Positions 11,348-30,643 of a stretch of DNA of 64,000 bases are shown here, one piece after another (position 1 is the stretch's first letter; every line of letters begins with the position of its first letter). The notes beneath the pieces are model-generated. The model made no database searches, was not told the DNA's origin, and was given only the letters and a program-made list of their open reading frames with translations. Made by a program: the position numbers and the translations under genes. The stretch spans positions 1 to 64,000 of the IMG/VR virus record IMGVR_UViG_3300005253_001115, one strand, 5' to 3'.

Positions 11348-11606
11348 AGAATTTGACATTATGTGGTACGGCTCTGGCGGCACACCGGGCTCGAAGGGCC
11401 TCATGACGAAAGAAGCTGCGGAAGTGTACGCCCGGACGCTGGAAGCCACAGACCGCGTTATTGGGTGGAAAGCTGGAACTTGCCAATCAGTATTTCAGTT
11501 CTGGGCGCTGGGGAATGGGGAGGCGATGGAGCTTCCGCACAACGAGGAACCCCCTACAGGGCGCAGAGCGGCAATTAAATGGCAGAAGGCGAGGAGACCG
11601 AAATGA
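11340..11606 (+). CDS. hypothetical protein with C-terminal RRxAIxxQKAR tag
   Basis: Ends TGRRAAIKWQKARRPK. Confidence 0.7.
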   Translation: MSEEFDIMWYGSGGTPGSKGLMTKEAAEVYARTLEATDRVIGWKAGTCQSVFQFWALGNGEAMELPHNEEPPTGRRAAIKWQKARRPK

Positions 11607-11701
11607 GAATGTTGTGGTTCAGGTTCAAGACTTTAGTGCTTATAGCTGCGGGCTGGGCGCTGGCCTTCGTCGTGTACAAAATTATGGGGTAAGGCACGCA
11701 A

Positions 11702-11995
11702 ATGTTCGAAAGACTAGATCTGCTATCCCAGCACCCTACCGACAAGGCGCTGGATATCCTGTACGAAGAATTCGACAAAGCTCTGCTGGCTGGGGAATTT
11801 GAGGCAGTTGACATTTACATGCGGCACGCTATAGTGAGTCGCTATCGGGTAGAGACCTTGGTGGGTTTTTTGACGATTTCCTTCCAATGGAAAGACCATC
11901 TAAAGGAACGGCCGGGTTTCTACGCTAGAGTAAAGGCTCGCGTAGAGAAGAGTTACCCAGATAGGGCAGAGAAGATCTTGATGGGGCTAGAGTAG
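11702..11995 (+). CDS. hypothetical protein
   Basis: 97-aa ORF. Confidence 0.6.
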   Translation: MFERLDLLSQHPTDKALDILYEEFDKALLAGEFEAVDIYMRHAIVSRYRVETLVGFLTISFQWKDHLKERPGFYARVKARVEKSYPDRAEKILMGLE

Positions 11996-12005
11996 AGGAG
12001 TTGGC

Positions 12006-12173
12006 GTGGGCGAAAAATGTGAAAAGTGCGATCATGGTGAGCATGCGCCCGGCAAGTGCGAAGTCCTCCACGTCTATGCGAGAGGCCCGAACGACCCGCC
12101 GGGGAATCGGCGCTGTTTGTGCGGATACGTTTTTGAAGACTTCACCACCCAGAGCAACGGAGATGCAGAATGA
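12006..12173 (+). CDS. small Cys/His-rich protein (55 aa, not in ORF track)
   Basis: GAGGAG RBS plus GTG; CEKCDHGEH...CLCG; ATGA overlap with the next gene. Confidence 0.55.
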   Translation: MGEKCEKCDHGEHAPGKCEVLHVYARGPNDPPGNRRCLCGYVFEDFTTQSNGDAE

Positions 12174-12754
12174 GTCTGGTACCGCACAAGTGCAGATGTG
12201 GGCAGTGTTTTCTGGAGATGCCGGAGACAGTACCACAGTCCAGAGGAGGACTGTTTGACCAACTCATGGTGCTAACTGCGGTGGCTGGGCACTTACAGCG
12301 GTCAGGAGAGCATCATTCAGCAGAGACGATTATAGAGGTGCAGGACAAGCTTTACACTGGGCTAGCGGCTGCACTACGAAAGGCAGAAAAGGGGGCGATA
12401 GCTCAGCAGGGAGAGCGCTTGAATATTCAAGAGGTCCGGGGTTCGAGCCCCCGTCGCTCCACCATTATTTCTGACTTCTTGGCGTCACTTCGTATGTACG
12501 AGTTCAACGCGATGGATTGCGGGTCCAGGCGGGTAATAAAGCTGTCCGTGGACGATATTGAGAAAGATTTCCTCGATGAGCTAAAGTTTGTGGACCAACT
12601 TCCCGAAGATGGTATCACAGGAAGAGCCCTGGAGCTTGCGGACCTTGTGTCCGATATGATCTGGGGCGGAGCTAGAGGCTGGGAACGCGCAGATCAGGAG
12701 CAGTTTGAGCACTTGAAGCGTGAAGCCGGGAAGAGAATGAAAGTAACCAACTGA
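12170..12754 (+). CDS. hypothetical protein containing an in-frame tRNA-like insert
   Basis: 194-aa ORF stays open across 12392-12464. Confidence 0.6.
   Translation: MSLVPHKCRCGQCFLEMPETVPQSRGGLFDQLMVLTAVAGHLQRSGEHHSAETIIEVQDKLYTGLAAALRKAEKGAIAQQGERLNIQEVRGSSPRRSTIISDFLASLRMYEFNAMDCGSRRVIKLSVDDIEKDFLDELKFVDQLPEDGITGRALELADLVSDMIWGGARGWERADQEQFEHLKREAGKRMKVTN
12392..12464 (+). tRNA. tRNA-Ala with the anticodon precisely deleted
   Basis: cttgaat-attcaag versus cttgaat-GGC-attcaag in tRNA-Ala(GGC); G3.U70, D/T arms and ACCA intact. Confidence 0.85.
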
Positions 12755-12773
12755 AACAGTTGAGGAAATCACG

Positions 12774-12965
12774 ATGGCCGGTACAAAGACTCAGAACAAG
12801 AACATGGGCAAGCGCGGAACGACGCAGCGCGACCGGTTCCTCACGGGCACGGACACGCCTGTGATTCGCATCATGCTAGGCGGCAAGCGGCGCTTTGTGT
12901 GGGGAGTCAAGAACACAGATGGCGGATACCGCCACGTCGATATTGCAGAAACCGAGCTTCGATAG
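12774..12965 (+). CDS. small basic hypothetical protein
   Basis: GAGGA RBS, 63 aa. Confidence 0.6.
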   Translation: MAGTKTQNKNMGKRGTTQRDRFLTGTDTPVIRIMLGGKRRFVWGVKNTDGGYRHVDIAETELR

Positions 12966-13018
12966 TCTCGGGTGGTTATCTAAAGACATGGACGAAAAGT
13001 GCATCTAACAGAATTTGA

Positions 13019-13095
13019 CGCGGGGTAGAGAAGTCTGGCATCTCGCAAGGCTCATAACCTTGAGATCGGAGGTTCGAATCCTTCTCCCGCTACCA
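13019..13095 (+). tRNA. tRNA-fMet(CAT)
   Basis: C1.U72 mismatch, CT-CAT-AA loop, CCA. Confidence 0.88.
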
Positions 13096-13100
13096 TTTTA

Positions 13101-13356
13101 CGGCTTATCCTTAGGCTGTAGAAGAAGCCGCGACAGGCGGCACAGACCGCCTCCAGAGGGGCTTCGAGGAAGGGAAATCCCGACAACAAAGTCCGCCCTG
13201 GTTGCGGAACCAATGTAGCTCGGTCAGTAGGCTTCCTTTTGTGCATGTAATGTGCATGTGGTCGCGACAGGCGACCGCGGTAATAACGATATTATGACCC
13301 AACAATACCCGCCAAGCCTCTCTACGATGCTCAAACCGGCGGGTTTTTGTTTTTTC
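13101..13356 (+). ncRNA. uncharacterised multi-hairpin RNA with GACAG hairpins copies 4 and 5 and a 3' terminator
   Basis: Hairpins at 13127-13141 and 13258-13278, several further helices, acccgcc/ggcgggt plus T-run. Confidence 0.6.
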
Positions 13357-13374
13357 CTGTGTTATTTCAACCAC

Positions 13375-13542
13375 ATGGACGATAAAGAGATCGAGATTGC
13401 CATTGACCAGTGGATTCGTGAGGTAGATTCTGCTAACCTAGAGCCTGAGGAGCTTGCTCTCTCTTTCCAGGCTCTCTGCACGGAGTTCGACATTCCTGAA
13501 GACCTTGGAAAGAAATTTGTTGCTTCAGCACTAGAAGACTAA
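13375..13542 (+). CDS. hypothetical acidic protein
   Basis: ATG after the terminator, 55 aa. Confidence 0.5.
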   Translation: MDDKEIEIAIDQWIREVDSANLEPEELALSFQALCTEFDIPEDLGKKFVASALED

Positions 13543-13566
13543 AGTTCCTCAGTGTGCGGCCGATAT
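13540..13566 (+). promoter_or_regulatory. sigma28-like promoter
   Basis: TAAAGTT-N12-GCCGATAT (15-nt spacer after TAAA), near-consensus. Confidence 0.7.
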
Positions 13567-13585
13567 ACTTCTGTGGAGAACCCGA

Positions 13586-14125
13586 ATGTCTGTTAAACGA
13601 GCGGTAGGTTATTGTGAGAAAGTGAACTGTGAGGACTACGCCAAGGGCGTATTCCTGCTCAACCACGGGGATACCTTCTACTGCCCCAGGTGCCGAGACA
13701 TAGGTGCTGTGGTAGCAGAGAGAGGCATCCATAGTGCAAAAGACGGTGTATCTTTCAAGGAAGTCAGGGTTGAATTCAACTACGACCCTATCAACAGACG
13801 TTTCAAAGAAATCGGTATCGTCCGAGACGAGTCGATCTGGGGCTCTGGCAGTACATACACGCTGCTCAGTCCTCTCATCAAGACCGAGAAGAGAGCCCTC
13901 AAGGTTGCAGAAGCGATCCTGGCCAATCTCCAGCGCTATGCAGACATTCTGGATGACGGCATTCCCAGAACCACCGAGACCATTGTATCTTTCGATGATG
14001 ATATCAGCGTCTTCACGGACAAGATGAGGCGTCTTGGTGCGGAGTGGGAGAACTCGAATCTCTCAATAAAAAGGCACGTCCGAGCGTGCAAGGATAAAGG
14101 GACTGCATGGCAAGAAATGGCATGA
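13586..14125 (+). CDS. hypothetical zinc-ribbon protein
   Basis: CEKVNC...CPRC; GGAG RBS. Confidence 0.7.
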   Translation: MSVKRAVGYCEKVNCEDYAKGVFLLNHGDTFYCPRCRDIGAVVAERGIHSAKDGVSFKEVRVEFNYDPINRRFKEIGIVRDESIWGSGSTYTLLSPLIKTEKRALKVAEAILANLQRYADILDDGIPRTTETIVSFDDDISVFTDKMRRLGAEWENSNLSIKRHVRACKDKGTAWQEMA

Positions 14126-14328
14126 TCGAAGTAGAGGGCTCCGTGGAGAAGATCCTCGGTGGCGGAATCTACGACGTTTCGGTGGACGGGTCTACTAGAC
14201 ATGTCATGGCCAAGCTGAGCGGTCGCCTACGCCAGTATCGAATCCGGGTCCTCCCCGGAGACAAGGTACGACTCGAAGTCTCGGAAGCCGACACTACAAA
14301 AGGCTTCATCGTTTACAGAATTGGCTAA
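14107..14328 (+). CDS. infA: translation initiation factor IF-1
   Basis: IEVEGSVEKIL...AKLSGRLRQYRIRVLPGDKV...KGFIVYR. Confidence 0.93.
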   Translation: MARNGMIEVEGSVEKILGGGIYDVSVDGSTRHVMAKLSGRLRQYRIRVLPGDKVRLEVSEADTTKGFIVYRIG

Positions 14329-14353
14329 AGTTCTGACCTGTCCCTGCCGATGA
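14326..14353 (+). promoter_or_regulatory. sigma28-like promoter
   Basis: TAAAGTT...GCCGATGA, 16-nt spacer. Confidence 0.6.
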
Positions 14354-14372
14354 GGAGGGGAAGGAGAGCATC

Positions 14373-14543
14373 ATGGTCAAAGTGTACATCATCGAGAGCG
14401 AGCGAGGCTGGGGCCAGAAGATTGACGAGGTGAAAGAGTTCGACACTCTGGAGCTTGCGGAAACCTTCGTGACTGAATTCAACTCTCACAACACCGAAGA
14501 GAAGGTCCCGGACTGGTACATGCGGGCGGAAGTGGTTCGATGA
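14373..14543 (+). CDS. small hypothetical protein (56 aa, not in ORF track)
   Basis: AAGGAG RBS; MVKVYIIESERGWGQKIDE...PDWYMRAEVVR. Confidence 0.7.
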   Translation: MVKVYIIESERGWGQKIDEVKEFDTLELAETFVTEFNSHNTEEKVPDWYMRAEVVR

Positions 14544-15028
14544 TCGAGCTATCCCCCTTCGTGGTTGCTATCCTGGGCATTTTCGCTATCATCGGGTTCA
14601 TCGATGTTGTGGGGCGGTTTTCGTCTCCCCGTCGAACCCGAATACGGGTGGATGGAACTGTAAACAGCAAGAGGCATCTACTGGCATGTGGCCTGATCTC
14701 CCAGGCACACCGCCAGGGAGACCCAGAGTTCTAGTGGCACAGCGTAAGTCGTGCGAAGGAAAAGACGGTAGGACCCTTAGAAAGGGTTCGCGTGTCGAGA
14801 TTCATGCACACACGACGGAGAGCGGCTGGCACATGAGTGGCTTTTTTGGTAAGGTACTGGAAGTATTGCACGATGAGAAGGGTCCATACCTTCGGATCAA
14901 GCTAAAAGGCACTCGTAAAGGTGCGGAGAGGCTTGCCCGAGCGTACAACATAACTAGACGTTAAAGGGGTCCGGGCAGATGAAAATAATCGCTTACAGGG
15001 GCGTACAGAGCAGCACCCTGGGGGAAAC

Positions 15029-15250
15029 ATGGGCTGGGCAAGAGGGTCTGAGCTTGTAGGGCGCGTAGCGCGAGTTTTGGTTGGCGTGGTAGAAACCCCC
15101 GAATGTCGGCGGGAAATCTACGAAGAGCTGGTTCAGGTGGCCCTGGACTTCGATTGTGACACGCTGGATGAGTGCCGAGGGATTGACACTGAACTGGACG
15201 CTGCGATTGACGAGCACTGGGGACCTTACGACAACGAGGAAGAAGACTAA
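15029..15250 (+). CDS. hypothetical protein
   Basis: 73-aa ORF with RBS. Confidence 0.6.
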   Translation: MGWARGSELVGRVARVLVGVVETPECRREIYEELVQVALDFDCDTLDECRGIDTELDAAIDEHWGPYDNEEED

Positions 15251-15444
15251 TGGGGCTTGTGCTTACAATCATTTATGTGGCTATTGGCGTCTCCCTAGCC
15301 AATCATATGGAGTACACGGACGGATTGAAGGGAATCCAGGCTCCTGCTAGATTTTTCGTGCTAGCAGCCGCTTGGCCGTTGCTGGTTTTTTATTGTTTGA
15401 AGTGTCTTGCCGACGGCACTGCCACGCTTCGGAGAAGGGGATGA
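15250..15444 (+). CDS. small membrane protein
   Basis: Two hydrophobic segments. Confidence 0.55.
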   Translation: MGLVLTIIYVAIGVSLANHMEYTDGLKGIQAPARFFVLAAAWPLLVFYCLKCLADGTATLRRRG

Positions 15445-15648
15445 TTTACTCAGGTCGAGTACATAAGATTGGTTTTTGCGCTATTCGTTGCTGGCTGTGG
15501 GTTGCCTTCTTGTGATGCAACACCCTATCACTGGCGCACGGTGGCTAGACTGTGGCTTGTTGCTCGTGGCTGCGGACTTCTTCGGACTACTTAACTTGAA
15601 TGGCTGGGGCGGCAAGCGCCGTAACTGGGCTGGGGAGTTGACACCATA

Positions 15649-16242
15649 ATGGGTTGGGACCAAGAGATATCGCGACAGGATGTACAGGGACTCCTTTTGG
15701 ACCTTCTCGGGGTAGATCCGAACGAGTTGCTCCGGCAGGTGATCGAGCAGAAGCTCGCTGGGCTGGGGCTATCCTACGAGGTCGAGGAAGATCCCGCACG
15801 GGAAGAAGGTGATGGTATGGTCCACAGCTTCCACCCTCGGAAGATCACGTTCTCAGACGGCCGGGTTTTCGTGGAAACCATCACGGAAAGCGTCCGCAGT
15901 GACGATTGGGGCAGCGACCACTACGGATTCGTGGAGGCCGGAAAGCCCTACAAGATCCTGCACGTTGACTATAACGATAACGGCGAGGGGGACGAACCGA
16001 AGGTCACTGAGGAAATAATTCCGGGGTCCGATGGTAATGTAACTTCCCTCGATGAGATTCGTGAGAAGGGGAACGCGCTGACTCCGGGCATGGGGGACGA
16101 GATCAGCGACTTCTTCGATTCCCAGGGAATCACCTCCTTCGAGTTTGCGCCTGCCGAGGAGTGTGGCGGCGGACTCTGTGCAGCCTGCGGCGATGCCGAC
16201 GGACCTTCCAAGGTCTGCGACTGTCCGAACTGTCATGTCTGA
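15649..16242 (+). CDS. hypothetical acidic protein with Cys-rich C-terminus
   Basis: 197 aa. Confidence 0.7.
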   Translation: MGWDQEISRQDVQGLLLDLLGVDPNELLRQVIEQKLAGLGLSYEVEEDPAREEGDGMVHSFHPRKITFSDGRVFVETITESVRSDDWGSDHYGFVEAGKPYKILHVDYNDNGEGDEPKVTEEIIPGSDGNVTSLDEIREKGNALTPGMGDEISDFFDSQGITSFEFAPAEECGGGLCAACGDADGPSKVCDCPNCHV

Positions 16243-16573
16243 GTCCGTAATCGACAGCGGGAAGCTGATCCCAGTTGACCTGACCAGGGAAGAGGCTCTC
16301 GCAGAATGCGAACGTCTCGGGCTGGAATGGATTTTGGAGACTTACGAAGACGCCAAGGAAGCCCTGTGTTGTGAGACTGAAGAGTACGCAGACATTGAGG
16401 GACTGGGGTTCTGCCGGGTCGAAGGCTTCAAGACTGAAGATCCTACTACTGATTGGTGTACCCTATCGAAGAATGAGGACGGGAGCTACGACTTCCGGGC
16501 TAGCTACTACAACGGCGGGGCACATTGGACGGAGCTTGTCGAAGGGGCCTGGAGGAAGCCGAGGAATGGATAA
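16235..16573 (+). CDS. hypothetical protein
   Basis: Overlapping start at 16235. Confidence 0.6.
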   Translation: MSESVIDSGKLIPVDLTREEALAECERLGLEWILETYEDAKEALCCETEEYADIEGLGFCRVEGFKTEDPTTDWCTLSKNEDGSYDFRASYYNGGAHWTELVEGAWRKPRNG

Positions 16574-17221: not shown

Positions 17222-17232
17222 AAGGAAACCGA

Positions 17233-17789: not shown

Positions 17790-18398
17790 ATGATGTTTGA
17801 AGTTGGTCTTTTGGTCGCGGGCTTTTTGGCTCTTCCCTGGTACGTTCTGAGTATCTTGGTGATCGTCTTTCTATGTGACGTTGGGGCGGCATCGAAGGAT
17901 GAGTTCGCTTTCGCCACTGGAGCAATTATCGTAGGGCTGCTTCTTGTCTCTGGTCTAGGCTGGTGGACAGAGGGCTTCAATCCTCTTGGGTGGGCATGGA
18001 ACAATCCAGTGGATGTGATTACTGGCTTCGTGGCCTACTCGTTGATCGGGTGTCTCTGGAGTGTTGCCAAGTGGAAGCTGTTTCTCCGCAAGTCGTTCAA
18101 GCGTTCTGAGAAGAAATTCGAAGAGGCCCTGACCAACTTCCAACGCATGCTGGACGAGGTGGCAAACGGGACTAGGCACCACGCGCCCACTGACCCGCCG
18201 AAGAAGACACGACCGAGCGAGTCGTTCGCCAGCGAGAACGCCGGTCGCCTGACGGGCTGGATTTTTCACTGGCCTTTCTCGGTTCTGGGTGTTCTGGTCG
18301 GTGACGTTATCATCCGGTTCGCGGACACTTGCTACAAGGCGCTGCACGGACTGTTCGAGCGCATGGCTCGGGCGCAGTTTGCGGGGTATGAGGAATGA
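17790..18398 (+). CDS. membrane protein
   Basis: Several TM segments; AGGAG RBS. Confidence 0.7.
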   Translation: MMFEVGLLVAGFLALPWYVLSILVIVFLCDVGAASKDEFAFATGAIIVGLLLVSGLGWWTEGFNPLGWAWNNPVDVITGFVAYSLIGCLWSVAKWKLFLRKSFKRSEKKFEEALTNFQRMLDEVANGTRHHAPTDPPKKTRPSESFASENAGRLTGWIFHWPFSVLGVLVGDVIIRFADTCYKALHGLFERMARAQFAGYEE

Positions 18399-18607
18399 GA
18401 AACCCCAAAGAGGCTTTGACCAAAGCAGGGTATGAGGCGTACCGGGCACATTTGTGGAACCTGCGGGAAGCTTTGTTCTTCCTTACGGGACACGCTGAGG
18501 ACCTGGAGCTAGATGCTCTTGACGACGGAGAACTGTGCAGAGGGCTGTATACCCTTGAGGGGGCCTTGCACACGCATAGGTTGGTATTGTTGGGCGAGTC
18601 CCGATGA
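18395..18607 (+). CDS. hypothetical protein
   Basis: ATGA overlaps on both sides. Confidence 0.6.
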   Translation: MRNPKEALTKAGYEAYRAHLWNLREALFFLTGHAEDLELDALDDGELCRGLYTLEGALHTHRLVLLGESR

Positions 18608-18996
18608 GGAATGAACCTACCTGTGAATGTATCGTCGATGGCTGCAAAAACCGTATCTCTGCCTTGGACGACCAATTCTGGTGCGGTGAGCACGGTGGAG
18701 AGACAATGTACGAGATGACAGACCGTAAGGGTTTGGTCGCTGCACAGAAAGCCCTGCGTCAGGAGCAGCACGGCACAAAGGAGGTACAGGGCACGCCGAT
18801 CGACGAGAATAAACCCATGACTGTTTCTGAGATGATAAGCGTGGTCGCTTACGAGCAGGGTACGGATGTTCTGGGCGGCACCGAGGAGGTGGAGATTCCC
18901 GACCCAGCTCCTACCAATTTGACCACTATCTTGACCACTACGGCCAGCGTAACGATTACCAAGCCCCGCGAAGCGAACCGTTTGAAGGCGCGGTAA
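18604..18996 (+). CDS. hypothetical protein, N-terminal C3H cluster plus internal tag variant
   Basis: CIVDGC...FWCGEH; TDRKGLVAAQKALR. Confidence 0.65.
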   Translation: MRNEPTCECIVDGCKNRISALDDQFWCGEHGGETMYEMTDRKGLVAAQKALRQEQHGTKEVQGTPIDENKPMTVSEMISVVAYEQGTDVLGGTEEVEIPDPAPTNLTTILTTTASVTITKPREANRLKAR

Positions 18997-19277
18997 TGCT
19001 CTGTACGATATGCTGTAAATGCGGCAGGTGGTACGGCCCCTGGTACGAGGAGCCCAGAAACTGCCTTGGCCAGTGGTATTTTGACGAGGCCGGGAAGCAG
19101 CGCTACAATAGTTGCGATCATTTGCGCTGTGGGGGTTGCGGGAAGGGGGACTTTCCCCTACCCTGTGAAGGTGAGAAAAAGGTGCTGAAAGCTCCTGGGG
19201 GCGCTCCTAGGAAAAAGTTCAATCGAAAGAAGAAAAAAAACAAGAATCGGAACAGAAATCGCTCAAGAAATGGCTAG
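18996..19277 (+). CDS. Cys-rich protein with Lys/Arg/Asn tail
   Basis: CCKCG...CGGC; RKKKKNKNRNRNRSR. Confidence 0.6.
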   Translation: MLCTICCKCGRWYGPWYEEPRNCLGQWYFDEAGKQRYNSCDHLRCGGCGKGDFPLPCEGEKKVLKAPGGAPRKKFNRKKKKNKNRNRNRSRNG

Positions 19278-20360: not shown

Positions 20361-20380
20361 TTTGATTACGAAAGGATAAA

Positions 20381-20652
20381 CAGACGGGCGGACAATCGCT
20401 CCAAGGAGAGGAAAGTCGGGACTGCACGGTACAGCCTAGAGGGTAACACCCTTCCACCGTGAGGTGCGTGACGGCAACAGAGACGAGCCTATTTGGTTAG
20501 GTTGAAACGGGCGACAGCGTGGGCGCAGCAACCGAAAGCAGGGGACATTGATCGTACCAGAGAGTCCCCGGGTATCGGGCAAAGATTCTAGTGGTAACAC
20601 TAGAGCAAGACGAATGATTGTCGATAACAGAATCCCGCTTATAGCCCATCTG
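20381..20652 (+). ncRNA. rnpB: RNase P RNA (compact, bacterial type)
   Basis: GAGGAAAGTCGGGAC and AACAGAATCCCGCTTA (P4), GCAACAGAGA, TGAAACGG, terminal P1 cagacgggc/gcccatctg. Confidence 0.93.
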
Positions 20653-20670
20653 CAATTTTAGGAGAAGAAC

Positions 20671-21108
20671 ATGTTGGCATTGGAAGATTTGGCAGGAGCT
20701 GACGAAACATTGGTTCGTGACCATATCGTGTGCGAGTTCGAGATCGAGGAGAAGGAGCTTGACGGATTCGAGGTCTTGATTGCTTACGAGAGTTGCGGTA
20801 GTTGGGGTTGCGATTCGAGCAACTGGTTCTTGCTCCGCAAGGACGGGCAGTTGTACGAGAACCACGGCTCGCACTGCTCGTGCAACGGGTTCGAGGAGCA
20901 GTGGGCTCCTGAGGAGACGAGCGTTGATTACTTGTTGTCGGAGAAGTTCTACTTTCCGTCGGGTGGGTACGACACCAACGGAAACGAAGAGGCCGTGAGT
21001 CGAGAGATTCGCCGTTTTTTTACAGTGACAGAAGCGACTGGCCGAAGGGCTGCAATCGCTGCACAGAAGGCACGGGCCGCAAACCCGTACATTGAAACGG
21101 AGGAATAG
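20671..21108 (+). CDS. hypothetical protein with C-terminal RRxAIxxQKAR tag
   Basis: GSHCSC motif; ends TGRRAAIAAQKARAANPYIETEE. Confidence 0.75.
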   Translation: MLALEDLAGADETLVRDHIVCEFEIEEKELDGFEVLIAYESCGSWGCDSSNWFLLRKDGQLYENHGSHCSCNGFEEQWAPEETSVDYLLSEKFYFPSGGYDTNGNEEAVSREIRRFFTVTEATGRRAAIAAQKARAANPYIETEE

Positions 21109-21280: not shown

Positions 21281-21326
21281 CCGGGTGTAGCGCAGTCTGG
21301 TAGCGCGCCTGCTTTGGGAGCAGGAT
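21281..21326 (+). pseudogene. 5' half of tRNA-Pro(TGG), T arm and acceptor 3' strand lost
   Basis: D arm and cctgc-TT-TGG-GA-gcagg intact, then sequence switches. Confidence 0.8.
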
Positions 21327-21419
21327 TTGGGTGGCACTACTTGCCCAGAAAACTTACAGCCTTTGTGCCTTAATTGCCATAGAGACAAAACGGTACAGGA
21401 GTCGAAAAATAGAAAATGA
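21327..21419 (+). pseudogene. C-terminal remnant of an HNH endonuclease
   Basis: LGGTTCPENLQPLCLNCHRDKTVQESKNRK-stop, no start. Confidence 0.75.
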
Positions 21420-24227: not shown

Positions 24228-24590
24228 ATGAGCAAAAGACCGAAGATCAACCACCTGGCCCGGCTGGGCCTGGAACCCCACCCCCACAGCACGCATACCC
24301 TCGACAATGCGCGCAGGCGGGACGTTGAGATTCTAGGCCGTCGCTCTCGTAAGGAGTGGCCCTGTGCCGACCCCAAGTGCAGCGTAGGCTTCGACATTGA
24401 TCTTGACGAGGTGTACATCGAGCATTTCGTGGGAACCTCGCGGTACGGAGGTGAGCACTTCCAGTACCACGTTGCATGCGCAATCAATAAGCAGGTCGTT
24501 CGACCTGTAGAGGGTGCCATCGACAAGGGTAACAATCGCCGACAAGCAATTCAGGCGCAACGCGCACGAAAGGCAGCCAATGCTGGTTAG
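24228..24590 (+). CDS. hypothetical zinc-binding protein with C-terminal RRxAIxxQRAR tag
   Basis: CADPKC...YHVAC; ends NNRRQAIQAQRARKAANAG; GGAG RBS before ATG 24228. Confidence 0.7.
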   Translation: MSKRPKINHLARLGLEPHPHSTHTLDNARRRDVEILGRRSRKEWPCADPKCSVGFDIDLDEVYIEHFVGTSRYGGEHFQYHVACAINKQVVRPVEGAIDKGNNRRQAIQAQRARKAANAG

Positions 24591-25136
24591 ACTCGTCCTT
24601 GAGGAGAACACACAGTGAGCAAGGTTCTTCAAAAGATCGGAACTATACGCACGACTGCCGAGCGTTTCGGCGTACCCACCGAAGGCATCCCAACGGAGCG
24701 GCATAATACCCTTGTATTCGTCAACCACAGGTTGCGCTCGACCCTAGGTAGCGCAAACTGGGTCGGAAAGTTTTGCTGGATCGAGATACACAAGTTAGTT
24801 TTCGCGAACCCCGAGCAAATGCGCGAGACGCTGGCACACGAGATTGCGCATGCCATGCAGGGTCCCGGCCACGGTCACAGCCAGCGATGGGAAGCAACCG
24901 CAAAGTCTCTCGGAAGTAAGGGCAAAAGACACGCTTCGCGCGAAGCTTGCGAAGCTATTGGAATCAGGGATACCTACCGCGTGGTAGCGCATTGCGAGAG
25001 ATGCGGCAGTGAATTCAAACGGGCCCGTGCCCCCGATAAACGCAAACAGTACACGCATATTAGGTGCGGCGGTGATATTGTCCTCGACTCGGAATACATC
25101 GAGGACAATAGAAAGGCAGCCAATGCTGGTTAGACT
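24568..25136 (+). repeat. 26-bp direct repeat (24568-24593 / 25111-25136) flanking the SprT-like gene
   Basis: gaaaggcagccaatgctggttagact occurs twice. Confidence 0.92.
24615..25133 (+). CDS. SprT-like zinc metalloprotease
   Basis: TLAHEIAH (HExxH), GHGHSQRW, C-terminal CERC..HIRC ribbon. Confidence 0.85.
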   Translation: MSKVLQKIGTIRTTAERFGVPTEGIPTERHNTLVFVNHRLRSTLGSANWVGKFCWIEIHKLVFANPEQMRETLAHEIAHAMQGPGHGHSQRWEATAKSLGSKGKRHASREACEAIGIRDTYRVVAHCERCGSEFKRARAPDKRKQYTHIRCGGDIVLDSEYIEDNRKAANAG

Positions 25137-25905
25137 GGTTTCAGATTTGCACCTTGAGTTCGGAAAGGACTGGGAGCCTGTGGTTCCTGAACTACCCGAG
25201 GACAGCGAGTCTGTTCTTGTGGTAGCCGGGGACATCGACACGGGTCTGGACGCTTGCGACTTTCTCCAGCAGGTTGCCCATCGGTTCTTGCACACGATTT
25301 ACGTTCTTGGCAACCACGATTTCTACAGAGGCAATGATCTCCACCTTCTGCCCGGATATGTTCGAGAGGAGTTGAGCGACTTCCCCAATATCACCCTTCT
25401 GGAGAACGAGACTCTGGTTGTGGGCAATGTCCGGTTCTTGGGGACTACCCTCTGGACCAATATGGCGAACGAGAATCCGACTGTCATGCTCATTATCGAG
25501 CAGGGCATGGCGGACTACGGGCAAATCAAGAAGAACGGCGGGGAGAGGATATTCGCCCCTGACACGATTGCTATACACAAGTTGGCAGTGAAATTTCTCG
25601 AAGAGGAGTTGCCGAAGGAGCACGATGGTCCGACCATAGTCGTCACACATCACCTTCCTAGCTTCCAAAGCGTACACCCCATGTACCATCGACCGGGGGT
25701 GAATGCTATCAATCCCGGGTTCTACTCCAGCTTGGATGGGTTGCTGGTTGACCACGACATTGCTTACTGGCTTCACGGCCACACGCACGCGACCGTAGAA
25801 TACGAGATCGAAGGCACTAGAGTACGAATGAACCCGCTTGGGTACGCGCCGGTAGAGCGTAAAGAGAATCCGCAATTTTCACCAACATGGAGAATCGAAG
25901 TATGA
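25123..25905 (+). CDS. calcineurin-like metallophosphoesterase
   Basis: SDLH, AGD, GNHD, THH and HGHTH motifs. Confidence 0.9.
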   Translation: MLVRLVSDLHLEFGKDWEPVVPELPEDSESVLVVAGDIDTGLDACDFLQQVAHRFLHTIYVLGNHDFYRGNDLHLLPGYVREELSDFPNITLLENETLVVGNVRFLGTTLWTNMANENPTVMLIIEQGMADYGQIKKNGGERIFAPDTIAIHKLAVKFLEEELPKEHDGPTIVVTHHLPSFQSVHPMYHRPGVNAINPGFYSSLDGLLVDHDIAYWLHGHTHATVEYEIEGTRVRMNPLGYAPVERKENPQFSPTWRIEV

Positions 25906-26267
25906 GTGGAGAAACCAAGGAAGACAAGTTTGACCGACTATTCCGACATGCCGACGCGATGTTCGATCGGGCGGAAAAGATGTTCGCGAATTTTCCGTGG
26001 AGCAAGCCGCCCAGCAACGACGGCTTCTTCACTAGAACCGTAACATACGTGCCCCTTGAGGATGAAGAGGAAGTCGAGCCCTGCAACGACCCCAGCGAGT
26101 ACAAGTTGGTCAAGACACCAACAGCCTTCGAGAGCAAGGAAGCCATCGAAGAGTGGCTGAACGGTTTCGGTGCAGAGGGCTGGGACCTGAACTGTTTCGA
26201 GTTCGGGTATGCGATCTTTTCACGGTACGTGGAGGACGAGGACGAGGATGAAGCGGAGGTGGAATGA
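25902..26267 (+). CDS. hypothetical protein
   Basis: ATGA overlap; EEWLNGFGAEGWDL segment. Confidence 0.65.
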   Translation: MSGETKEDKFDRLFRHADAMFDRAEKMFANFPWSKPPSNDGFFTRTVTYVPLEDEEEVEPCNDPSEYKLVKTPTAFESKEAIEEWLNGFGAEGWDLNCFEFGYAIFSRYVEDEDEDEAEVE

Positions 26268-26581
26268 CCACTGTAATTCATATTCGAGACACCCCGCCGG
26301 GATACAAGGACAACCCGGACTACGTGTACATCGGACGCCCCAGCAAGTGGGGTAATCCTTACCCGGTGAGCATGGGTCGGACCGCCTGTATTGATCTGTT
26401 TCGAGAGCATGTGACTTCCGATCCACGGTTGCTGGAGGCTCTCTCCGAACTACGGGGAAAGACCCTGGTCTGCTATTGTAAGCCCCAGGCTTGTCACGGG
26501 GATGTGCTAGCTGAACTGGCTGATGCCAAGCAGAAGGAGGACGAAGATGAAGCGGAAGAATCAGAGTCCGAGGGAGTATAG
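26264..26581 (+). CDS. DUF4326-like protein
   Basis: VYIGRPSKWGNPY...LRGKTLVCYCKPQACHGDVL. Confidence 0.85.
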   Translation: MTTVIHIRDTPPGYKDNPDYVYIGRPSKWGNPYPVSMGRTACIDLFREHVTSDPRLLEALSELRGKTLVCYCKPQACHGDVLAELADAKQKEDEDEAEESESEGV

Positions 26582-26855
26582 TCTACAGCATTGCAAGGAT
26601 CGTGCGCGCGAGCGTTACGCTTTCGAGCTTCTGGACAACGACTACGACGTTCTATGTAACTCTGTTAGGGAAGAGTTGGTGGGCGACTGCTTTATAGGCG
26701 GGATCTCTAGGTTGAAAAAGGTCAACCAAGAGGGTTCGCAATACACCTTTATCGTGGTCCTAAGGGGCAGAGAACTGGTTGTGGTATTTGACGCTGGGCG
26801 CTCATTAGTTACCACTCTTTTGCCGCCGGAGCAGTTTTCTGAGCATTTGAGCTAA
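26547..26855 (+). CDS. hypothetical protein
   Basis: HCKDRARERY...LVTTL, weakly RelE-like. Confidence 0.6.
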   Translation: MKRKNQSPREYSLQHCKDRARERYAFELLDNDYDVLCNSVREELVGDCFIGGISRLKKVNQEGSQYTFIVVLRGRELVVVFDAGRSLVTTLLPPEQFSEHLS

Positions 26856-26879
26856 AGACTTCGGCCGAGAGACCGATAG
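26853..26879 (+). promoter_or_regulatory. sigma28-like promoter, leaderless to ATG 26887
   Basis: TAAA-N15-ACCGATAG. Confidence 0.55.
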
Positions 26880-26886
26880 ATAAGGT

Positions 26887-27339
26887 ATGAGTAGTGGAGC
26901 AGAACACAATAGAGGAGCCCTAGTTGCCGGTGGGTTAGTCATGCTTGCCTGTGTAGTAACAGGAGTTGCGTTTGATCCTAGATTAGGTACTATTGCCGCA
27001 GTATCGTTTCTGTTTGGCGTTTTCATGTTGAGCCCGGATCTGGATCTACGGAACAGTTCCCCAACTAAGCGCTGGGGTCCTCTTCGACTCTTATGGCGAT
27101 TCTACTCTAAAACACATGCACACAGAGGCATTAGCCATAGTATGCTCTTTGGCACTTTGGAGCGTGTCCTGTACATGTCTTCCGTTCTTCTGCTGATTGG
27201 CTATTGCTGGCACGGGTTCAACGTAGAATTTTTCAGCGATGTGCAAGTAATGGCGCAAGCATATCCATTAGAAATGCTTACCTCGTTCACAGGCATGTGG
27301 GTAGCAAATACAGTACACATCGTACAAGACGGGATGTAA
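26887..27339 (+). CDS. DUF2227-like metal-binding membrane protein
   Basis: LSPDLD, RWGPLRLLW and HRGISH motifs. Confidence 0.8.
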   Translation: MSSGAEHNRGALVAGGLVMLACVVTGVAFDPRLGTIAAVSFLFGVFMLSPDLDLRNSSPTKRWGPLRLLWRFYSKTHAHRGISHSMLFGTLERVLYMSSVLLLIGYCWHGFNVEFFSDVQVMAQAYPLEMLTSFTGMWVANTVHIVQDGM

Positions 27340-27470
27340 ATGATGGACAACATTGAAACACTCAAAGTAGATCTCCGTTGGCAGCTTTCCTTCGAAGAAA
27401 TTGACTGGGACTATTTCATGGAAACCGTAGAAAGGGCTAGGGCTGCTCAACAGGCGCTACTGGATCAGCA

Positions 27471-27695
27471 ATGAGCAAAGGATATCGGAAAATATCCGTC
27501 GGTGGTGTGAATTACGAGTATAAGGTAGGGCGCGCTCACGTAGACATCAGACCCCCTGGGGGGGCACGCATGACGCCGGACTTACGCCAGGTGACGGGGC
27601 TTACCTGGGACGAAATCGAGCGCGGGACGTGGAAGCGGTATTTCAGCGTCACGCCGCAACAAATTAGAGAGTACATTGAAGGAAGACAGACATGA
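27471..27695 (+). CDS. hypothetical protein
   Basis: 74 aa, overlapping starts/stops. Confidence 0.6.
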   Translation: MSKGYRKISVGGVNYEYKVGRAHVDIRPPGGARMTPDLRQVTGLTWDEIERGTWKRYFSVTPQQIREYIEGRQT

Positions 27696-28042
27696 GCAAA
27701 CCCAGTAGCAAACCTCTGGTTCGATGCACAGGGAAAGAGTGCTCCATTCACTGCCCACACAGCCTACCACATGAAAAGTGGGGCGAACTGAAGACATGTA
27801 CTCTCTGGGGAGAATGTTCAGAGAGTGAGAAAAAGATTCGTTGCGTGAAAGTGAAAGAAGGAGAACACGATGAATGACCGAAACTGTGCGGTCCGAGAGA
27901 GAATCGGAGACGGCGTTTCAGTTGGGCGCTGCTGGATTTACACAGACGAGGCTGAGGGTACTCTGACGTGCCCCAGACACGGAGATGTAACAAGTATTCA
28001 GAAGCGCTTCAGCGAGACTGGGGAGCTTGGAGAAGACCCGAG

Positions 28043-29272
28043 ATGAGTGACTACGACGTATTTCAGGGTGGCGTGCCGATCAAGGCATGGACGAAGGGCG
28101 TGCCGATTGAGTCGGCGGCTCTCGATCAGTTGAAGAATGTGGCGGCTCTGCCGTTCATTCACAAGTGGGTAGCAGTGATGCCGGACGTTCACTTCGGGCG
28201 TGGTGCTACCGTTGGCTCGGTCATTCCGACCAAGGGGGCTATCATTCCGGCGGCTGTCGGTGTGGACATTGGTTGCGGCATGGTCGCCGTGCGAACGGGA
28301 CTCGTGTCTCACGACCTTCCGACCAACTTGAAGAAGTGGCGTCTAGCTATCGAAGAGGCTGTGCCGCACGGCGCAGTCAAGGGTGCTTCCCACGATCGTG
28401 GCGGATTCTCTCCGGGCGCTCTTCCGAAGACGAACTCTCGTCTGTGGCAGAACAAGTTGGCGAATCGTTACGCTACCATTATGGGAAAGCACAAGTCGGT
28501 TGCTCACAAGGCTGGTCCACACCAGCTTGGTACGCTTGGGGGCGGTAACCACTTCATCGAGATTTGCCTGGATGAGGCGGATCGCGTGTGGCTGATGCTG
28601 CACTCGGGTAGCCGTGGCCTTGGCAACAAGATCGGAATGTACTTCACCGATCTGGCAAAGAAGGAGATGAAGATTCACTTCGTGAACTTGCCGGACAAGG
28701 ATCTTGCATATCTGCCGGAGGGTACGCAGCACTTCGATGACTACATCGAGGCGATGACGTGGGCGCAGGACTTTGCTCAGTTCAACCGCGACCTTATGGT
28801 TCTTCAGGTGTTCGATGCCTTGAAGCGCGAGGGCGGAGTTCCGCAGAAGAAGCTCTTGACTCACGATGTGGCAGTCAATTGCCATCACAATTACAGCGCT
28901 CGCGAGAACCACTACGGACAGAACGTGTGGCTCACTCGTAAGGGAGCAGTGTGCGCGCGCAAGGGCGTCATGGGAATCATCCCGGGTTCGATGGGTACCA
29001 AGTCCTTCATTGTAGAGGGCAAGGGTAACCCGGAGAGCTTTGACTCGTGCTCGCACGGGGCTGGTCGCATCATGAGCCGCTCGAAGGCAAAGAAGACGTT
29101 CACGCTGGACGACCACATCAAGGCAACGGAGGGGGTCGAGTGTCGCAAGGACGAAGGAGTCATTGATGAGACGCCGGGAGCTTATAAGGATATCGACGCT
29201 GTTATGGCAGCGCAGGCATCTTTGGTGGACATCAAGCATACGCTTCGTCAGGTGCTCTGTGTCAAGGGCTAA
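28043..29272 (+). CDS. rtcB: RtcB RNA 3'-phosphate/5'-OH ligase
   Basis: MPDVH, VGVDIGCG, GTLGGGNHF, HSGSRG, HHNY, SHGAGR and DETPGAYK motifs. Confidence 0.97.
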   Translation: MSDYDVFQGGVPIKAWTKGVPIESAALDQLKNVAALPFIHKWVAVMPDVHFGRGATVGSVIPTKGAIIPAAVGVDIGCGMVAVRTGLVSHDLPTNLKKWRLAIEEAVPHGAVKGASHDRGGFSPGALPKTNSRLWQNKLANRYATIMGKHKSVAHKAGPHQLGTLGGGNHFIEICLDEADRVWLMLHSGSRGLGNKIGMYFTDLAKKEMKIHFVNLPDKDLAYLPEGTQHFDDYIEAMTWAQDFAQFNRDLMVLQVFDALKREGGVPQKKLLTHDVAVNCHHNYSARENHYGQNVWLTRKGAVCARKGVMGIIPGSMGTKSFIVEGKGNPESFDSCSHGAGRIMSRSKAKKTFTLDDHIKATEGVECRKDEGVIDETPGAYKDIDAVMAAQASLVDIKHTLRQVLCVKG

Positions 29273-29410
29273 TCTGGTTGCCGTAAAGAGGCAAGATAAG
29301 AATGGAAAGATGGTAACCAAGTGGGTTCGACCTGAAGGTGTAAATCCGCCTTCTTAGTCCAACACACATGGCGGCTACAAAGTTGCTTCTGGGGTAGGAA
29401 AGGGAACACA

Positions 29411-29674
29411 ATGTCGCAGCAGGAACATGACGCTAGAGTCAGAGATCGCCTTTCTTGGCGCTTTATCCAACACAAGGAAGACGCCTGCCCCAAATGTCAC
29501 GGAGCAGGGGTTCGTATGTATCCCAATACTGCAACATGGGACAATAGACCTGGAATGGTATCTGGCCAAGCATTCACAGGAGATGTTTGTGACAAGTGTT
29601 GGGGAAGTGGGGATAAATATCGCCCTTGGCCCTCGCATCGAGAATTCAGAGAATTGAAAGAAGCAAATGGCTAG
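29411..29674 (+). CDS. DnaJ-like zinc-finger protein
   Basis: CPKCHGAG / CDKCWGSG. Confidence 0.65.
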   Translation: MSQQEHDARVRDRLSWRFIQHKEDACPKCHGAGVRMYPNTATWDNRPGMVSGQAFTGDVCDKCWGSGDKYRPWPSHREFRELKEANG

Positions 29675-29761
29675 TCCCGCAACGTGGAAAGATTACGCGC
29701 TGGGGTTTGGCCTCATCATGCTTATGCTAGGATTTACGGCAGGCTTCATAGTAGGTGTGAC

Positions 29762-29998
29762 ATGGCACTAGGAGATGAACTTCACTACGAGATCTGCCCG
29801 ATGCTGTTCGATTATCGCATCATCAAGACCGACGGATACATTGTCACAGACAATTGGTTATACGACGATCTTGATGATGCGGTCACGGCCTTAGTGCAGA
29901 TGGAAGAAGGCAAGGAACCAGAGGGCTGGTTCCGCCATATCGAGACTGGGCGGCGTCGCCCCGGTGGGAATGCGTCCAAGGAGTACATAAACCCGTGA
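29762..29998 (+). CDS. hypothetical protein
   Basis: AGGTG RBS; EPEGWFRH. Confidence 0.6.
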   Translation: MALGDELHYEICPMLFDYRIIKTDGYIVTDNWLYDDLDDAVTALVQMEEGKEPEGWFRHIETGRRRPGGNASKEYINP

Positions 29999-30375
29999 GC
30001 CATTCAGGCATGAGCCATTACATTGTATGCGCACATTGCGGCAAGACCTACAATACCCATGATTCGTGGCAGGCTGGCGACCACGAGAACGAAGCATGTA
30101 CCGCTGTCCAGCACGGTTTTTGCGATACCTGCGGAGGTAATGGAGCACTACACATAGCCGAAACCGGAGAGGCAGTCCACACAGATCAGACAGAGTGCAT
30201 CAGGTTTCTAACGGAGCAGGTTAAATACATGGAGCAGTACCGCCTTGAGCACGACACGAGGTATTGCGAACTGGAGAAAGCTGTGGAGGGTTTGGTCAAT
30301 GGCCGCAAGGCTGCCTTGGCGGAATCCCGGACACTAAAGGCAATACGAAACTCCGATGCCGCTGTATCACGTTAA
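29995..30375 (+). CDS. hypothetical Cys/His-rich protein
   Basis: CAHC, CDTC; weak tag variant NGRKAALAESR. Confidence 0.6.
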   Translation: MSHSGMSHYIVCAHCGKTYNTHDSWQAGDHENEACTAVQHGFCDTCGGNGALHIAETGEAVHTDQTECIRFLTEQVKYMEQYRLEHDTRYCELEKAVEGLVNGRKAALAESRTLKAIRNSDAAVSR

Positions 30376-30643
30376 TGTTTCCGTCGTTGTAGGCGACCAG
30401 CATCTCACCTTTTCGAAGGTAGTAGAAGCAAAAGGTTCAGTTGCTGGTCCCATTAAGCTAACGGTGGCTAGGCTCCCGGGCGTGTATCAGCGTGAAGAAG
30501 CCCCTTCCGACATTGGGAGTTCCAGCAGGTGCTATGCAGGGCACGCAAGTGACCTTACTCTAATTCACGGAGAGGTACCAGAGCCGGAACCCATCACCGA
30601 TCGTCGAGGGGCGATTAGAGACCAGAAAGCACGCAATGGATAA
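30356..30643 (+). CDS. hypothetical protein with C-terminal RRxAIxxQKAR tag
   Basis: Ends TDRRGAIRDQKARNG. Confidence 0.7.
   Translation: MPLYHVNVSVVVGDQHLTFSKVVEAKGSVAGPIKLTVARLPGVYQREEAPSDIGSSSRCYAGHASDLTLIHGEVPEPEPITDRRGAIRDQKARNG

What the first reader, a model, noticed from the sequence alone, without database searches (positions are those of the whole stretch)
11556..30640. Shared Arg-rich peptide tag [TN][GDN]R[RK]xAIxxQ[KR]AR on unrelated small proteins
Seen: TGRRAAIKWQKAR (11556), TGRRAAIAAQKAR (21037), NNRRQAIQAQRAR (24531) and TDRRGAIRDQKAR (30596) sit at the C-termini of otherwise dissimilar proteins, often after a Pro/Glu linker. An internal variant is TDRKGLVAAQKAL (18718); weaker matches lie at 30298 and at the end of 2057-2458. 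Codons differ synonymously between copies, so conservation is at the peptide level. Known: lambda N binds boxB through an Arg-rich helix (..RRAEKQAQWKAANP), which resembles RRAAIAAQKARAANP, although this could be chance. Inference: a modular addressing tag for one common partner such as RNA, capsid, ribosome/RNAP or a protease.
Basis: partly seen in the sequence, partly recalled or inferred. Interest (0 to 1): 0.88.

Follow-up and report, generated by a model that had tools for sequence, protein, structure and literature searches.

The report
Shared arginine-rich tail on phage proteins
A group of uncultivated giant phages from marine sediment attaches the same short, positively charged helix to the end of many unrelated small proteins; it looks like an undescribed address label that brings them all to one common, still unknown partner.

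Summary
The four strong copies (11556, 21037, 24531, 30596) are real. A profile trained only on copies from other contigs scores them 15-21 bits, against a maximum of 9.8 in shuffles. The internal copy at 18718 and the two "weak" copies are within noise.

Conservation is at the peptide level. Among 32 distinct DNA copies, 60% of same-residue codon pairs use different codons.

The tail is modular:
- About 23 carriers fall into about 17 BLAST-unrelated bodies.
- 105 of the 120 best homologs of one body stop exactly where the tail begins.
- One ortholog pair shares about 30% of the body but 15 of 15 tail residues.
- Two short contigs each carry four consecutive tagged genes.

The consensus is [DE]xx[NT][DG]RR[AG]AIx[AD]Q[KR]AR[KN]. 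AlphaFold2 predicts a helix after a low-confidence linker.

No Pfam, NCBIfam, PHROG or PDB entry covers the tail, and searches of cultured phages and of 185,579 species genomes found no copy. The resemblance to lambda N is no better than shuffled peptides.

Best reading: a lineage-specific docking helix for one conserved cytoplasmic partner, most likely a nucleic acid. The partner is inferred, not shown.

Seen in passing: a phage-encoded RNase P RNA lies next to one carrier.

The parts
11337..11606 (+). Carrier P1, 89 aa. Acidic body (net charge -6), then the linker NEEPP, then the tag TGRRAAIKWQKAR at 11556-11594 and RPK-stop. Accessory gene, absent from relative L023.
   Evidence: 16.7 bits with the independent profile
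20671..21108 (+). Carrier P2, 145 aa. The body (PHROG 8792-type fold, net charge -19) is followed by the tag TGRRAAIAAQKAR at 21037-21075 and AANPYIETEE-stop. It lies between the RNase P RNA (20380-20657) and tRNA-Gln (21115).
   Evidence: 21.4 bits. 105 of the 120 best homologs lack the tail. Phage Rollin and D6 homologs end where the tag starts. AlphaFold2: body pLDDT 82-97 apart from one 72 block (residues 41-50), tail helix pLDDT 63-67.
24228..24590 (+). Carrier P3, 120 aa from ATG 24228 (the start used by all orthologs; the listed ORF starts at TTG 24195). Cys/His-rich body, then the tag NNRRQAIQAQRAR at 24531-24569 and KAANAG-stop.
   Evidence: 23 orthologs of 51-99% identity all keep the tail; RR, Q and AR are invariant; helix 116-129 after a linker with pLDDT below 50; 15.2 bits
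30356..30643 (+). Carrier P4, 95 aa. Body, then the linker GEVPEPEPI, then the tag TDRRGAIRDQKAR at 30596-30634 and NG-stop. The stop overlaps the ATG of the next gene (30636). Accessory gene, absent from L023.
   Evidence: 20.6 bits. Ortholog P0035 shares about 30% of the body and 15/15 of the tail.
18718..18756 (+). Internal TDRKGLVAAQKAL inside ORF 18604-18996. It may be a decayed copy: it resembles the degenerate tail TDRRGLVADQKRR of the gene that replaces 18398-18604 in relative L027. On its own it is not significant.
24568..24593 (+). First copy of an exact 26-nt direct repeat (GAAAGGCAGCCAATGCTGGTTAGACT). It covers the last codons of P3 and the first codons of the downstream phosphoesterase gene.
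25111..25136 (+). Second copy of the 26-nt repeat. The two copies flank the SprT-like gene 24615-25133, which relatives L023 and L032 lack. This explains SprT's RKAANAG ending as a junction duplication, not a tag.

Best explanation
The motif is a lineage-specific short linear module of about 15-18 residues: an N-capped, basic alpha-helix with consensus [DE]-x-x-[NT]-[DG]-R-R-[AG]-A-I-x-[AD]-Q-[KR]-A-R-[KN]. It is joined by a short Pro/acidic, poorly ordered linker to the C-terminus of many unrelated small accessory proteins. Rarely it occurs twice or internally. The carriers belong to a clade of uncultivated marine-sediment jumbo phages whose large terminase is 31-35% identical to those of PaBG, Erwinia and Dickeya jumbo phages.

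Shown:
- The tail is real, selected at the peptide level, appended to pre-existing folds, and better conserved than the bodies.
- It is predicted to be helical and not confidently packed on the body.
- About two thirds of the helix circumference is conserved (R1, R2, A4, I5, Q8, K/R9, A10, R11), while positions 3, 6 and 7 vary.

Inferred:
- The helix inserts into a groove of one conserved cytoplasmic partner, so it works as an address or docking tag that brings different effector bodies to the same place.
- The most likely partner is a nucleic acid bound in the manner of arginine-rich-motif peptides. Candidates are a structured RNA of the translation apparatus (tRNA, rRNA or the phage's own RNase P RNA) or the phage DNA.

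My estimates: about 0.75 that it is a docking tag for one common partner, and about 0.4 that the partner is a nucleic acid.
For: Real and significant.

Peptide-level selection.

Appended module:
- The P2 body family has 15 tagged members, all close relatives of 136-147 aa, and 105 untagged members of median 124 aa that end where the tag begins.
- Cultured-phage homologs end before the tag.

Tail under stronger constraint than the body:
- P4 against P0035: 15/15 tail residues, about 30% of the body.
- P3 orthologs: 0.76 identity in the tail against 0.62 in the body, with RR, Q and AR invariant.

Many unrelated carriers:
- 16 hits at E<=1e-3 among 1.84 billion proteins. Fifteen are small proteins carrying the tag, nearly all at the C-terminus.
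- About 17 BLAST-unrelated bodies.
- Four consecutive tagged genes on each of L111 and L120.
- At least 6 tagged genes in this phage.

Structure: a helix after a low-confidence linker. Consensus and conserved face.

Charge: tails carry +1 to +7, mostly on acidic bodies.

Cytoplasmic partner: one carrier, P0040, has an N-terminal hydrophobic anchor with the basic tail at the other end. This topology is inferred.

Context: the carriers sit among 33 tRNA genes, an RNase P RNA, RtcB, a CCA-adding enzyme and an IF1 homolog. On another contig a tagged gene lies next to a phage S21 gene.
Against: No partner was identified.

No repeated boxB-like hairpin was seen in the first 32 kb of the window.

The tag shows no sequence similarity beyond composition to known RNA-binding arginine-rich peptides or to anything in PDB or Pfam.

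The tRNA-rich neighbourhood may simply be the phage's hypervariable accessory region. Two further tagged genes lie elsewhere in the genome, next to a methyltransferase-like gene.

Strict conservation of Ala-Ile and Gln fits a protein cleft as well as an RNA groove.
Confidence: 0.5

Rival explanations
1. The tail is a protein-protein loading signal. It docks on a phage structural or assembly protein (scaffold, portal or inner capsid surface), so that a variable set of small effectors is packed into the head and injected with the DNA. This would be analogous to the T4 capsid targeting sequence or to encapsulin cargo-loading peptides.
For: A common terminal peptide on unrelated small proteins, joined by a flexible linker, is exactly the anatomy of cargo tags. 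Tagged genes cluster in variable accessory islands of the kind that hold anti-defence genes. The basic charge would also suit co-packing with DNA.
Against: There are no virion data. The tagged genes lie in the tRNA/early-looking arm, not in the structural module at 38-62 kb. The T4 signal is N-terminal and is removed by the prohead protease; no conserved cleavage motif is evident upstream of the tag.
Confidence: 0.2
2. The tail is a handle for a protease or unfoldase. It could act as a degron that makes these early proteins short-lived. Alternatively it could be a tether by which the bodies deliver bound host targets to the protease, in the way the C-terminal tail of SspB docks on ClpX.
For: The tag has a C-terminal position, a flexible linker and a basic RRxAI core that recalls the MuA-type ClpX signal RRKKAI (resemblance from general knowledge). 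A SprT-like metalloprotease gene lies next to P3 in this phage.
Against: The conserved core is 2-10 residues from the end in the window copies. It can be 18-42 residues from the end, or N-terminal, as in P0034, P0038 and P0032, so a free C-terminal carboxylate is not part of the signal. The SprT gene is a recent insertion that relatives with the tag lack.
Confidence: 0.1
3. The conservation is really at the nucleic-acid level. Under this view the 3' gene end is a junction element: a ribosome-binding site or translational-coupling signal for the next gene, or a recombination site for cassette exchange. The peptide would be a by-product.
For: Several tags end in ...KKNG-stop or ...ARNG-stop, where AATGG holds the ATG of the next gene and the Lys/Arg codons are purine-rich. 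Gene cassettes are swapped exactly at gene junctions.
Against: 60% of same-residue codon pairs use different codons, including CGN/AGR switches. P2's tag is followed by a tRNA gene and P1's by a 96-nt gap, so there is no common downstream arrangement. Copies also occur N-terminally and in tandem. The trailing NG is explained by start-codon overlap; the RRxAIxxQ core is not.
Confidence: 0.03
4. The motif is chance, or the carriers are diverged full-length paralogs.
For: The motif is short and rich in common residues (Ala, Arg, Lys, Gln).
Against: Scores lie far above shuffles with an independently trained profile. The bodies have no detectable similarity and different family matches. Untagged homologs of one body are abundant.
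Confidence: 0.01

Closest known systems
Arginine-rich motif (ARM) peptides of phage antiterminators (lambda N, P22 N, phi21 N) and of HIV Rev / BIV Tat
   Same: A short, basic peptide rich in Arg, Ala, Gln and Lys that forms a helix. In the known cases it binds a structured RNA groove and works as a portable module. Composition and length are similar.
   Different: There is no sequence similarity beyond composition and no PDB hit. The known phage ARMs are N-terminal, occur on one dedicated regulator, and have a cognate boxB hairpin. Here the peptide is C-terminal on at least 17 unrelated bodies, and no repeated hairpin was found.
T4 capsid targeting sequence and encapsulin cargo-loading peptides
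   Same: A short terminal peptide on a flexible linker, shared by unrelated proteins, that addresses them to one assembly (T4: PMC3012670; encapsulins: general knowledge).
   Different: The T4 signal is N-terminal and is cleaved off. Encapsulin peptides are hydrophobic/Gly-rich, not Arg-rich. Virion association of the tagged proteins is untested.
C-terminal basic tails of ribosome-rescue factors (ArfB, SmpB)
   Same: A basic helix-forming tail behind a flexible linker, which in those factors inserts into an RNA-lined channel of the ribosome (general knowledge). The genomic context here is rich in translation genes.
   Different: These proteins did not appear in the profile searches of PDB or of 1.84 billion proteins at E<=1e-3. 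The resemblance rests on memory of those sequences and was not tested directly.
ClpX recognition signal of MuA (C-motif 2) and the ClpX-binding tail of SspB
   Same: A basic C-terminal peptide on a flexible linker that docks a protein on an unfoldase (general knowledge).
   Different: Those signals work at the extreme C-terminus. The conserved core here lies 2-42 residues from the end and can be N-terminal.

Membership tests
lambda N-type arginine-rich motif | Sequence similarity to N-family ARM peptides beyond shared composition | tested here: not met
   Tag profile against lambda N (-2.5 bits), P22 N and BIV Tat. 81-100% of their own shuffles score at least as well. Best ungapped identities are not above shuffles. 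PDB profile and single-sequence searches do not retrieve them at E<=10.
lambda N-type arginine-rich motif | N-terminal position on a dedicated antitermination protein | tested here: not met
   The tag is C-terminal on 4 unrelated window proteins and on about 17 unrelated bodies overall.
lambda N-type arginine-rich motif | A cognate boxB-like RNA hairpin in the genome | tested here: inconclusive
   A scan of window 1-32000 (+ strand) for stems of at least 7 bp with 4-8 nt loops found no repeated hairpin family. Imperfect or distant targets would be missed.
lambda N-type arginine-rich motif | Direct binding to RNA | not testable with these tools
   Needs gel shift or CLIP with the peptide.
T4-type capsid targeting sequence / cargo-loading peptide | A terminal peptide shared by unrelated proteins on a flexible linker | tested here: met
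T4-type capsid targeting sequence / cargo-loading peptide | N-terminal position with a prohead-protease cleavage site | tested here: not met
   The tag is C-terminal. No conserved cleavage motif lies upstream beyond [DE]xx[NT][DG].
T4-type capsid targeting sequence / cargo-loading peptide | Tagged proteins are found inside virions | not testable with these tools
   Needs virion proteomics.
MuA-type ClpX degron (C-motif 2) | The basic motif lies at the extreme C-terminus | tested here: not met
   The core ends 2-10 residues before the stop in the window, and 18-42 residues before the end or near the N-terminus in P0038, P0034 and P0032.
Any curated protein family (Pfam, NCBIfam, PHROGs) or solved structure covering the tail | A significant profile match over the tail | tested here: not met
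   No match over the tail in Pfam at E<=1, PHROGs at E<=0.1, NCBIfam at E<=0.1, or PDB at E<=10.

The most novel reading that the evidence does not exclude
A clade of jumbo phages uses one genetically portable peptide as a proteome-wide address label. Any small gene that acquires the 15-residue helix is delivered to the same hub, which could be the ribosome or tRNA machinery that these phages rebuild with their own tRNAs, RNase P RNA, IF1, S21 and tmRNA, or the virion. Variable islands of tagged genes would then form an exchangeable arsenal acting at that hub. This would be the first phage-wide short linear motif system of its kind, and a ready-made orthogonal tagging tool.
Probability: 0.45. 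Interest if true: 0.82.

Novelty: new variant of a known kind. Interest (0 to 1): 0.7.

Why it matters
Short linear motifs that wire many proteins to one hub are central in eukaryotic and eukaryotic-virus biology, but they are hardly documented in phages.

Here there is a clean, statistically solid example with clear evolutionary signatures. The tail was appended to pre-existing folds, it is kept under stronger constraint than the bodies, and it occurs in runs of consecutive genes.

Finding the partner would assign a site of action to dozens of proteins of unknown function at once. It would show how these phages organise their accessory genes. It could also yield a compact, portable targeting peptide.

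The phage also encodes a reduced RNase P RNA next to the most conserved carrier. This adds a directly testable link to tRNA processing.

Tried and rejected
- **Region-restricted word search.** A search with P2's last 42 residues returned only orthologs, because it needs several shared words.
- **Atlas look-alikes.** The tail gave only low-score, uninformative hits.
- **Fold searches.** Foldseek of the P3 and P2 models against PDB gave nothing at E<=0.001. The weak top hits (PARP-type zinc finger for P3, HPF/YfiA for P2) are leads only.
- **Cultured phages.** tblastn of P3, P0028, P0034, an L111 carrier and a bare tail found nothing.
- **Cellular genomes.** A pattern scan of 185,579 species genomes for [TN]GRRAAIx[AW]Q gave 76 raw matches, none confirmed.
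- **IMG/VR relatives.** P1 and P4 have no relatives there beyond the source contig.
- **Degenerate DNA patterns in IMG/VR.** Apart from this contig, L134 (the already known tail on the L032 contig) and L136, the hits were out-of-frame noise.
- **Hairpin scan.** No repeated boxB-like element was found.
- **Literature.** Searches for a shared arginine-rich C-terminal phage motif, for capsid-targeting tails and for phage-encoded RNase P RNA found nothing relevant.
- **Rejected readings.** These were full-length paralogy, chance, a DNA/RNA-level junction element, lambda N homology, and SprT's RKAANAG ending as a tag.


Full report
**Source and setting.** The window is positions 1-64000 of IMG/VR contig IMGVR_UViG_3300005253_001115, which is 266,640 bp long. 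Its contents identify it as a jumbo phage:
- large terminase at 47826-49820, portal at 50146-52170 and major head protein at 60911-62068;
- 33 tRNA genes;
- a CCA-adding enzyme at 32092-35202 on the minus strand, and an ORF at 27968-29272 whose counterparts on related contigs carry the Pfam RtcB family;
- an IF1 homolog at 14107-14328 and a macro-domain protein at 10964-11347.

No cultured phage is close at the DNA level. The terminase is 31-35% identical to those of PaBG and of the Erwinia and Dickeya jumbo phages. At least one close relative comes from a marine sediment metagenome.

They are in frame on the + strand, 2-10 residues before the stop of four ORFs.
- A back-translated pattern hits three of them, against none in 100 shuffles.
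- In leave-one-out tests three held-out copies score 13.4-18.6 bits, against a shuffle maximum of 11.1. The fourth, the 24531 copy, scores only 4.9 bits in that test.
- To avoid circularity I built a profile only from copies found later on other contigs. It scores all four window copies at 15.2-21.4 bits, against a shuffle mean of 5.4 and maximum of 9.8.
- The internal copy at 18718 scores 5.8-8.8 bits. The end of 2057-2458 scores 3.7 bits, and 30298 does not surface. All three are indistinguishable from noise.

**At what level is it conserved?** The DNA alignment of the four copies is poor. Most identical residues use different codons. Among 32 distinct DNA copies collected from the window and relatives, 65% of codon pairs encode the same residue. 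Of those, 60% are synonymous-different, including CGN/AGR switches for arginine. Selection therefore acts on the peptide.

**Is it modular?** Four lines of evidence say yes.
- The four window bodies share no BLASTP similarity and have different or no family matches. P2 matches PHROG 8792 over residues 17-85 only.
Of the 120 best homologs among 5.8 billion proteins, 15 carry the tail; these are the closest relatives, 136-147 aa long. The other 105 have a median length of 124 aa and stop right where the tail begins. The homologs in Pseudomonas phages Rollin and D6 also end there.
- P3 has 23 orthologs of 51-99% identity, and all keep the tail. RR, Q and AR are invariant, and pairwise identity is 0.76 in the tag core against 0.62 in the body.
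- P4 and its ortholog P0035 share about 30% of the body but 15 of 15 tail residues.

**How widespread is it?** A profile of 17 tails was searched against 1.84 billion representative proteins and gave 16 hits at E<=1e-3. One is an obvious false positive, a 760-aa protein with EPEVTDRRGLI repeats. The other 15 are proteins of 60-154 aa with the motif at or near the C-terminus. They include one protein with a copy at each end (P0032) and one with two tandem copies (P0034).

Contigs encoding these proteins reveal more carriers:
- Four consecutive genes on L111, and four on L120, all end in the tag.
- A 184-kb relative (L032) has a further unrelated carrier.
- The window's own contig holds two more tagged genes outside the window.

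In all, about 23 carriers fall into about 17 BLAST-unrelated bodies.

No copy was found in cultured phages or in one genome from each of 185,579 prokaryotic species. No Pfam, NCBIfam, PHROG or PDB entry covers the tail.

**Anatomy.** The consensus of 22 distinct copies is [DE]-x-x-[NT]-[DG]-R-R-[AG]-A-I-x-[AD]-Q-[KR]-A-R-[KN].
- The N/T-D/G pair looks like a helix N-cap.
- R1, R2, A4, I5 and Q8 are invariant in this set. Positions 3, 6 and 7 vary, so roughly two thirds of the helix surface is constrained.
- AlphaFold2 predicts a helix in P3 (residues 116-129) after a linker with pLDDT below 50.
- In P2 it predicts a low-confidence extension (pLDDT 63-67) of the last helix of a confidently folded body (pLDDT 82-97 apart from one 72 block).
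- Tails carry net charges of +1 to +7, and most bodies are acidic.
- The frequent NG-stop ending arises because AATGG contains the ATG of the next, overlapping gene. This accounts for the last residues only.

**Mechanism.**
- Shown: a peptide-level, portable, helical, basic module under strong purifying selection on many unrelated small proteins.
- Inferred: it docks into a groove of one conserved partner and so addresses different bodies to the same place.
- I favour a nucleic-acid partner. The reasons are the Arg-rich helix with strictly conserved arginines and a broad conserved face, and the setting of the tagged genes. They lie among tRNA genes, an RNase P RNA, RtcB, the CCA-adding enzyme and IF1, and on another contig next to a phage S21 gene.
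- The support is circumstantial. No repeated hairpin target was found. The tRNA arm may simply be the variable accessory region. Two tagged genes lie elsewhere.
- A protein hub remains a serious rival, either for virion loading or as a protease or unfoldase.
- An RNA- or DNA-level junction element is essentially excluded by the codon data and by the varied downstream contexts. P2 is followed by a tRNA gene, P1 by a 96-nt gap, P3 by a 24-nt gap and P4 by an overlap.

**Comparison with known systems.** The lambda N analogy fails as homology. Using the lambda N, P22 N and BIV Tat peptide sequences printed in PMC6023938, none scores better against the tag profile than its own shuffles. It remains a functional analogy only. 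T4's capsid targeting sequence, encapsulin cargo peptides, the ArfB and SmpB tails and MuA/SspB-type ClpX signals share the logic of a short terminal peptide on a linker that addresses a protein to a machine. Each differs in position, chemistry or a defining feature, as listed in the membership table.

**Side observations.**
- A reduced bacterial class A RNase P RNA (278 nt, 149 bits, catalytic core motifs intact) lies at 20380-20657, directly upstream of P2. The same arrangement occurs in the 184-kb relative, while relative L023 lacks it.
- The SprT-like gene 24615-25133 is an insertion flanked by an exact 26-nt duplication of the P3/phosphoesterase junction. That explains its RKAANAG ending.
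- A near-identical relative (99.99% over 16 kb) carries a different gene cassette at 18398-18604, and that gene ends in a degenerate tag.

**Verdict.** The finding is real for four window copies and extends well beyond the window. It is a new, lineage-specific modular peptide whose logic is familiar but whose sequence, distribution and partner are undescribed. The partner is the open question.

Noticed in passing
window 20380-20657 (+): Phage-encoded bacterial class A RNase P RNA (Rfam RF00010, 149 bits, E 4e-46). It is reduced to 278 nt but keeps the conserved core motifs. It sits between tRNA-Pro and tag carrier P2. The same arrangement occurs in the 184-kb relative (L032 7149-7425), while relative L023 lacks it. 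Three literature searches found no report of a phage-encoded RNase P RNA.
   Followed up: partly
window 24568-24593 and 25111-25136; gene 24615-25133: The SprT-like metalloprotease gene is an insertion flanked by an exact 26-nt direct repeat. The repeat duplicates the end of P3 and the start of the phosphoesterase gene. It leaves a remnant MLVRLV... start after the first copy and gives SprT a false RKAANAG tail. Relatives L023 and L032 lack the gene.
   Followed up: yes
window 18398-18604, compared with L027 726-1003: A relative that is 99.99% identical over the next 16 kb carries a different gene at this spot. It is 96 aa and ends VTDRRGLVADQKRRSNEE, whereas the window ORF is 70 aa. The cassette exchange occurs exactly at gene boundaries.
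   Followed up: partly
window 13308-13344 (+); also L032 1046-1082, L023 2358-2394, L122 1621-1656: An abiF RNA motif (RF03085, 59 bits) is conserved at the same place in four related phages. It lies inside or just upstream of ORF 13252-13542.
   Followed up: no
window 1-24017: There are 33 tRNA genes. One odd call is at 12392-12464, where ARAGORN reports a two-base anticodon loop anomaly but Rfam scores it as a tRNA. Rfam also calls an extra tRNA at 21281-21349. An IF1 homolog lies at 14107-14328. Related contigs add a tmRNA (L122 189-544) and a ribosomal protein S21 gene (L109 1571-1774).
   Followed up: partly
window 6355-6912, 9570-10163, 18996-19277: Other small proteins in the same arm end in long, unpatterned Lys/Arg-rich tails, for example an RNase H-like protein ending ...RRRNKKASKRAGKAGKKRSKK. 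These are not the tag, but they suggest a general use of basic C-terminal tails in this phage.
   Followed up: no
window 24228-24590 (P3 body): The conserved Cys/His spacing, C-x4-C-x29-H-x2-C, recalls a PARP-type zinc finger. The top Foldseek hit is the PARP-1 DNA-binding domain, but it is not significant (E 0.57).
   Followed up: partly
window 1284-2060: A 258-aa protein has sub-threshold matches to the arginine deiminase / dimethylarginine dimethylaminohydrolase superfamily (E about 5e-4, below the Pfam cut-off). It may be a guanidino-modifying enzyme in a phage that uses an Arg-rich tag.
   Followed up: no
L141 10013-10388 (same contig, outside the window): Two more adjacent tagged genes, ending ...STGRRAAIEAQKARKNAQT and ...EPTGRRAAIAAQKARKNAGR, lie near a DNA methyltransferase-like gene. 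The tag is therefore not confined to the tRNA arm.
   Followed up: partly
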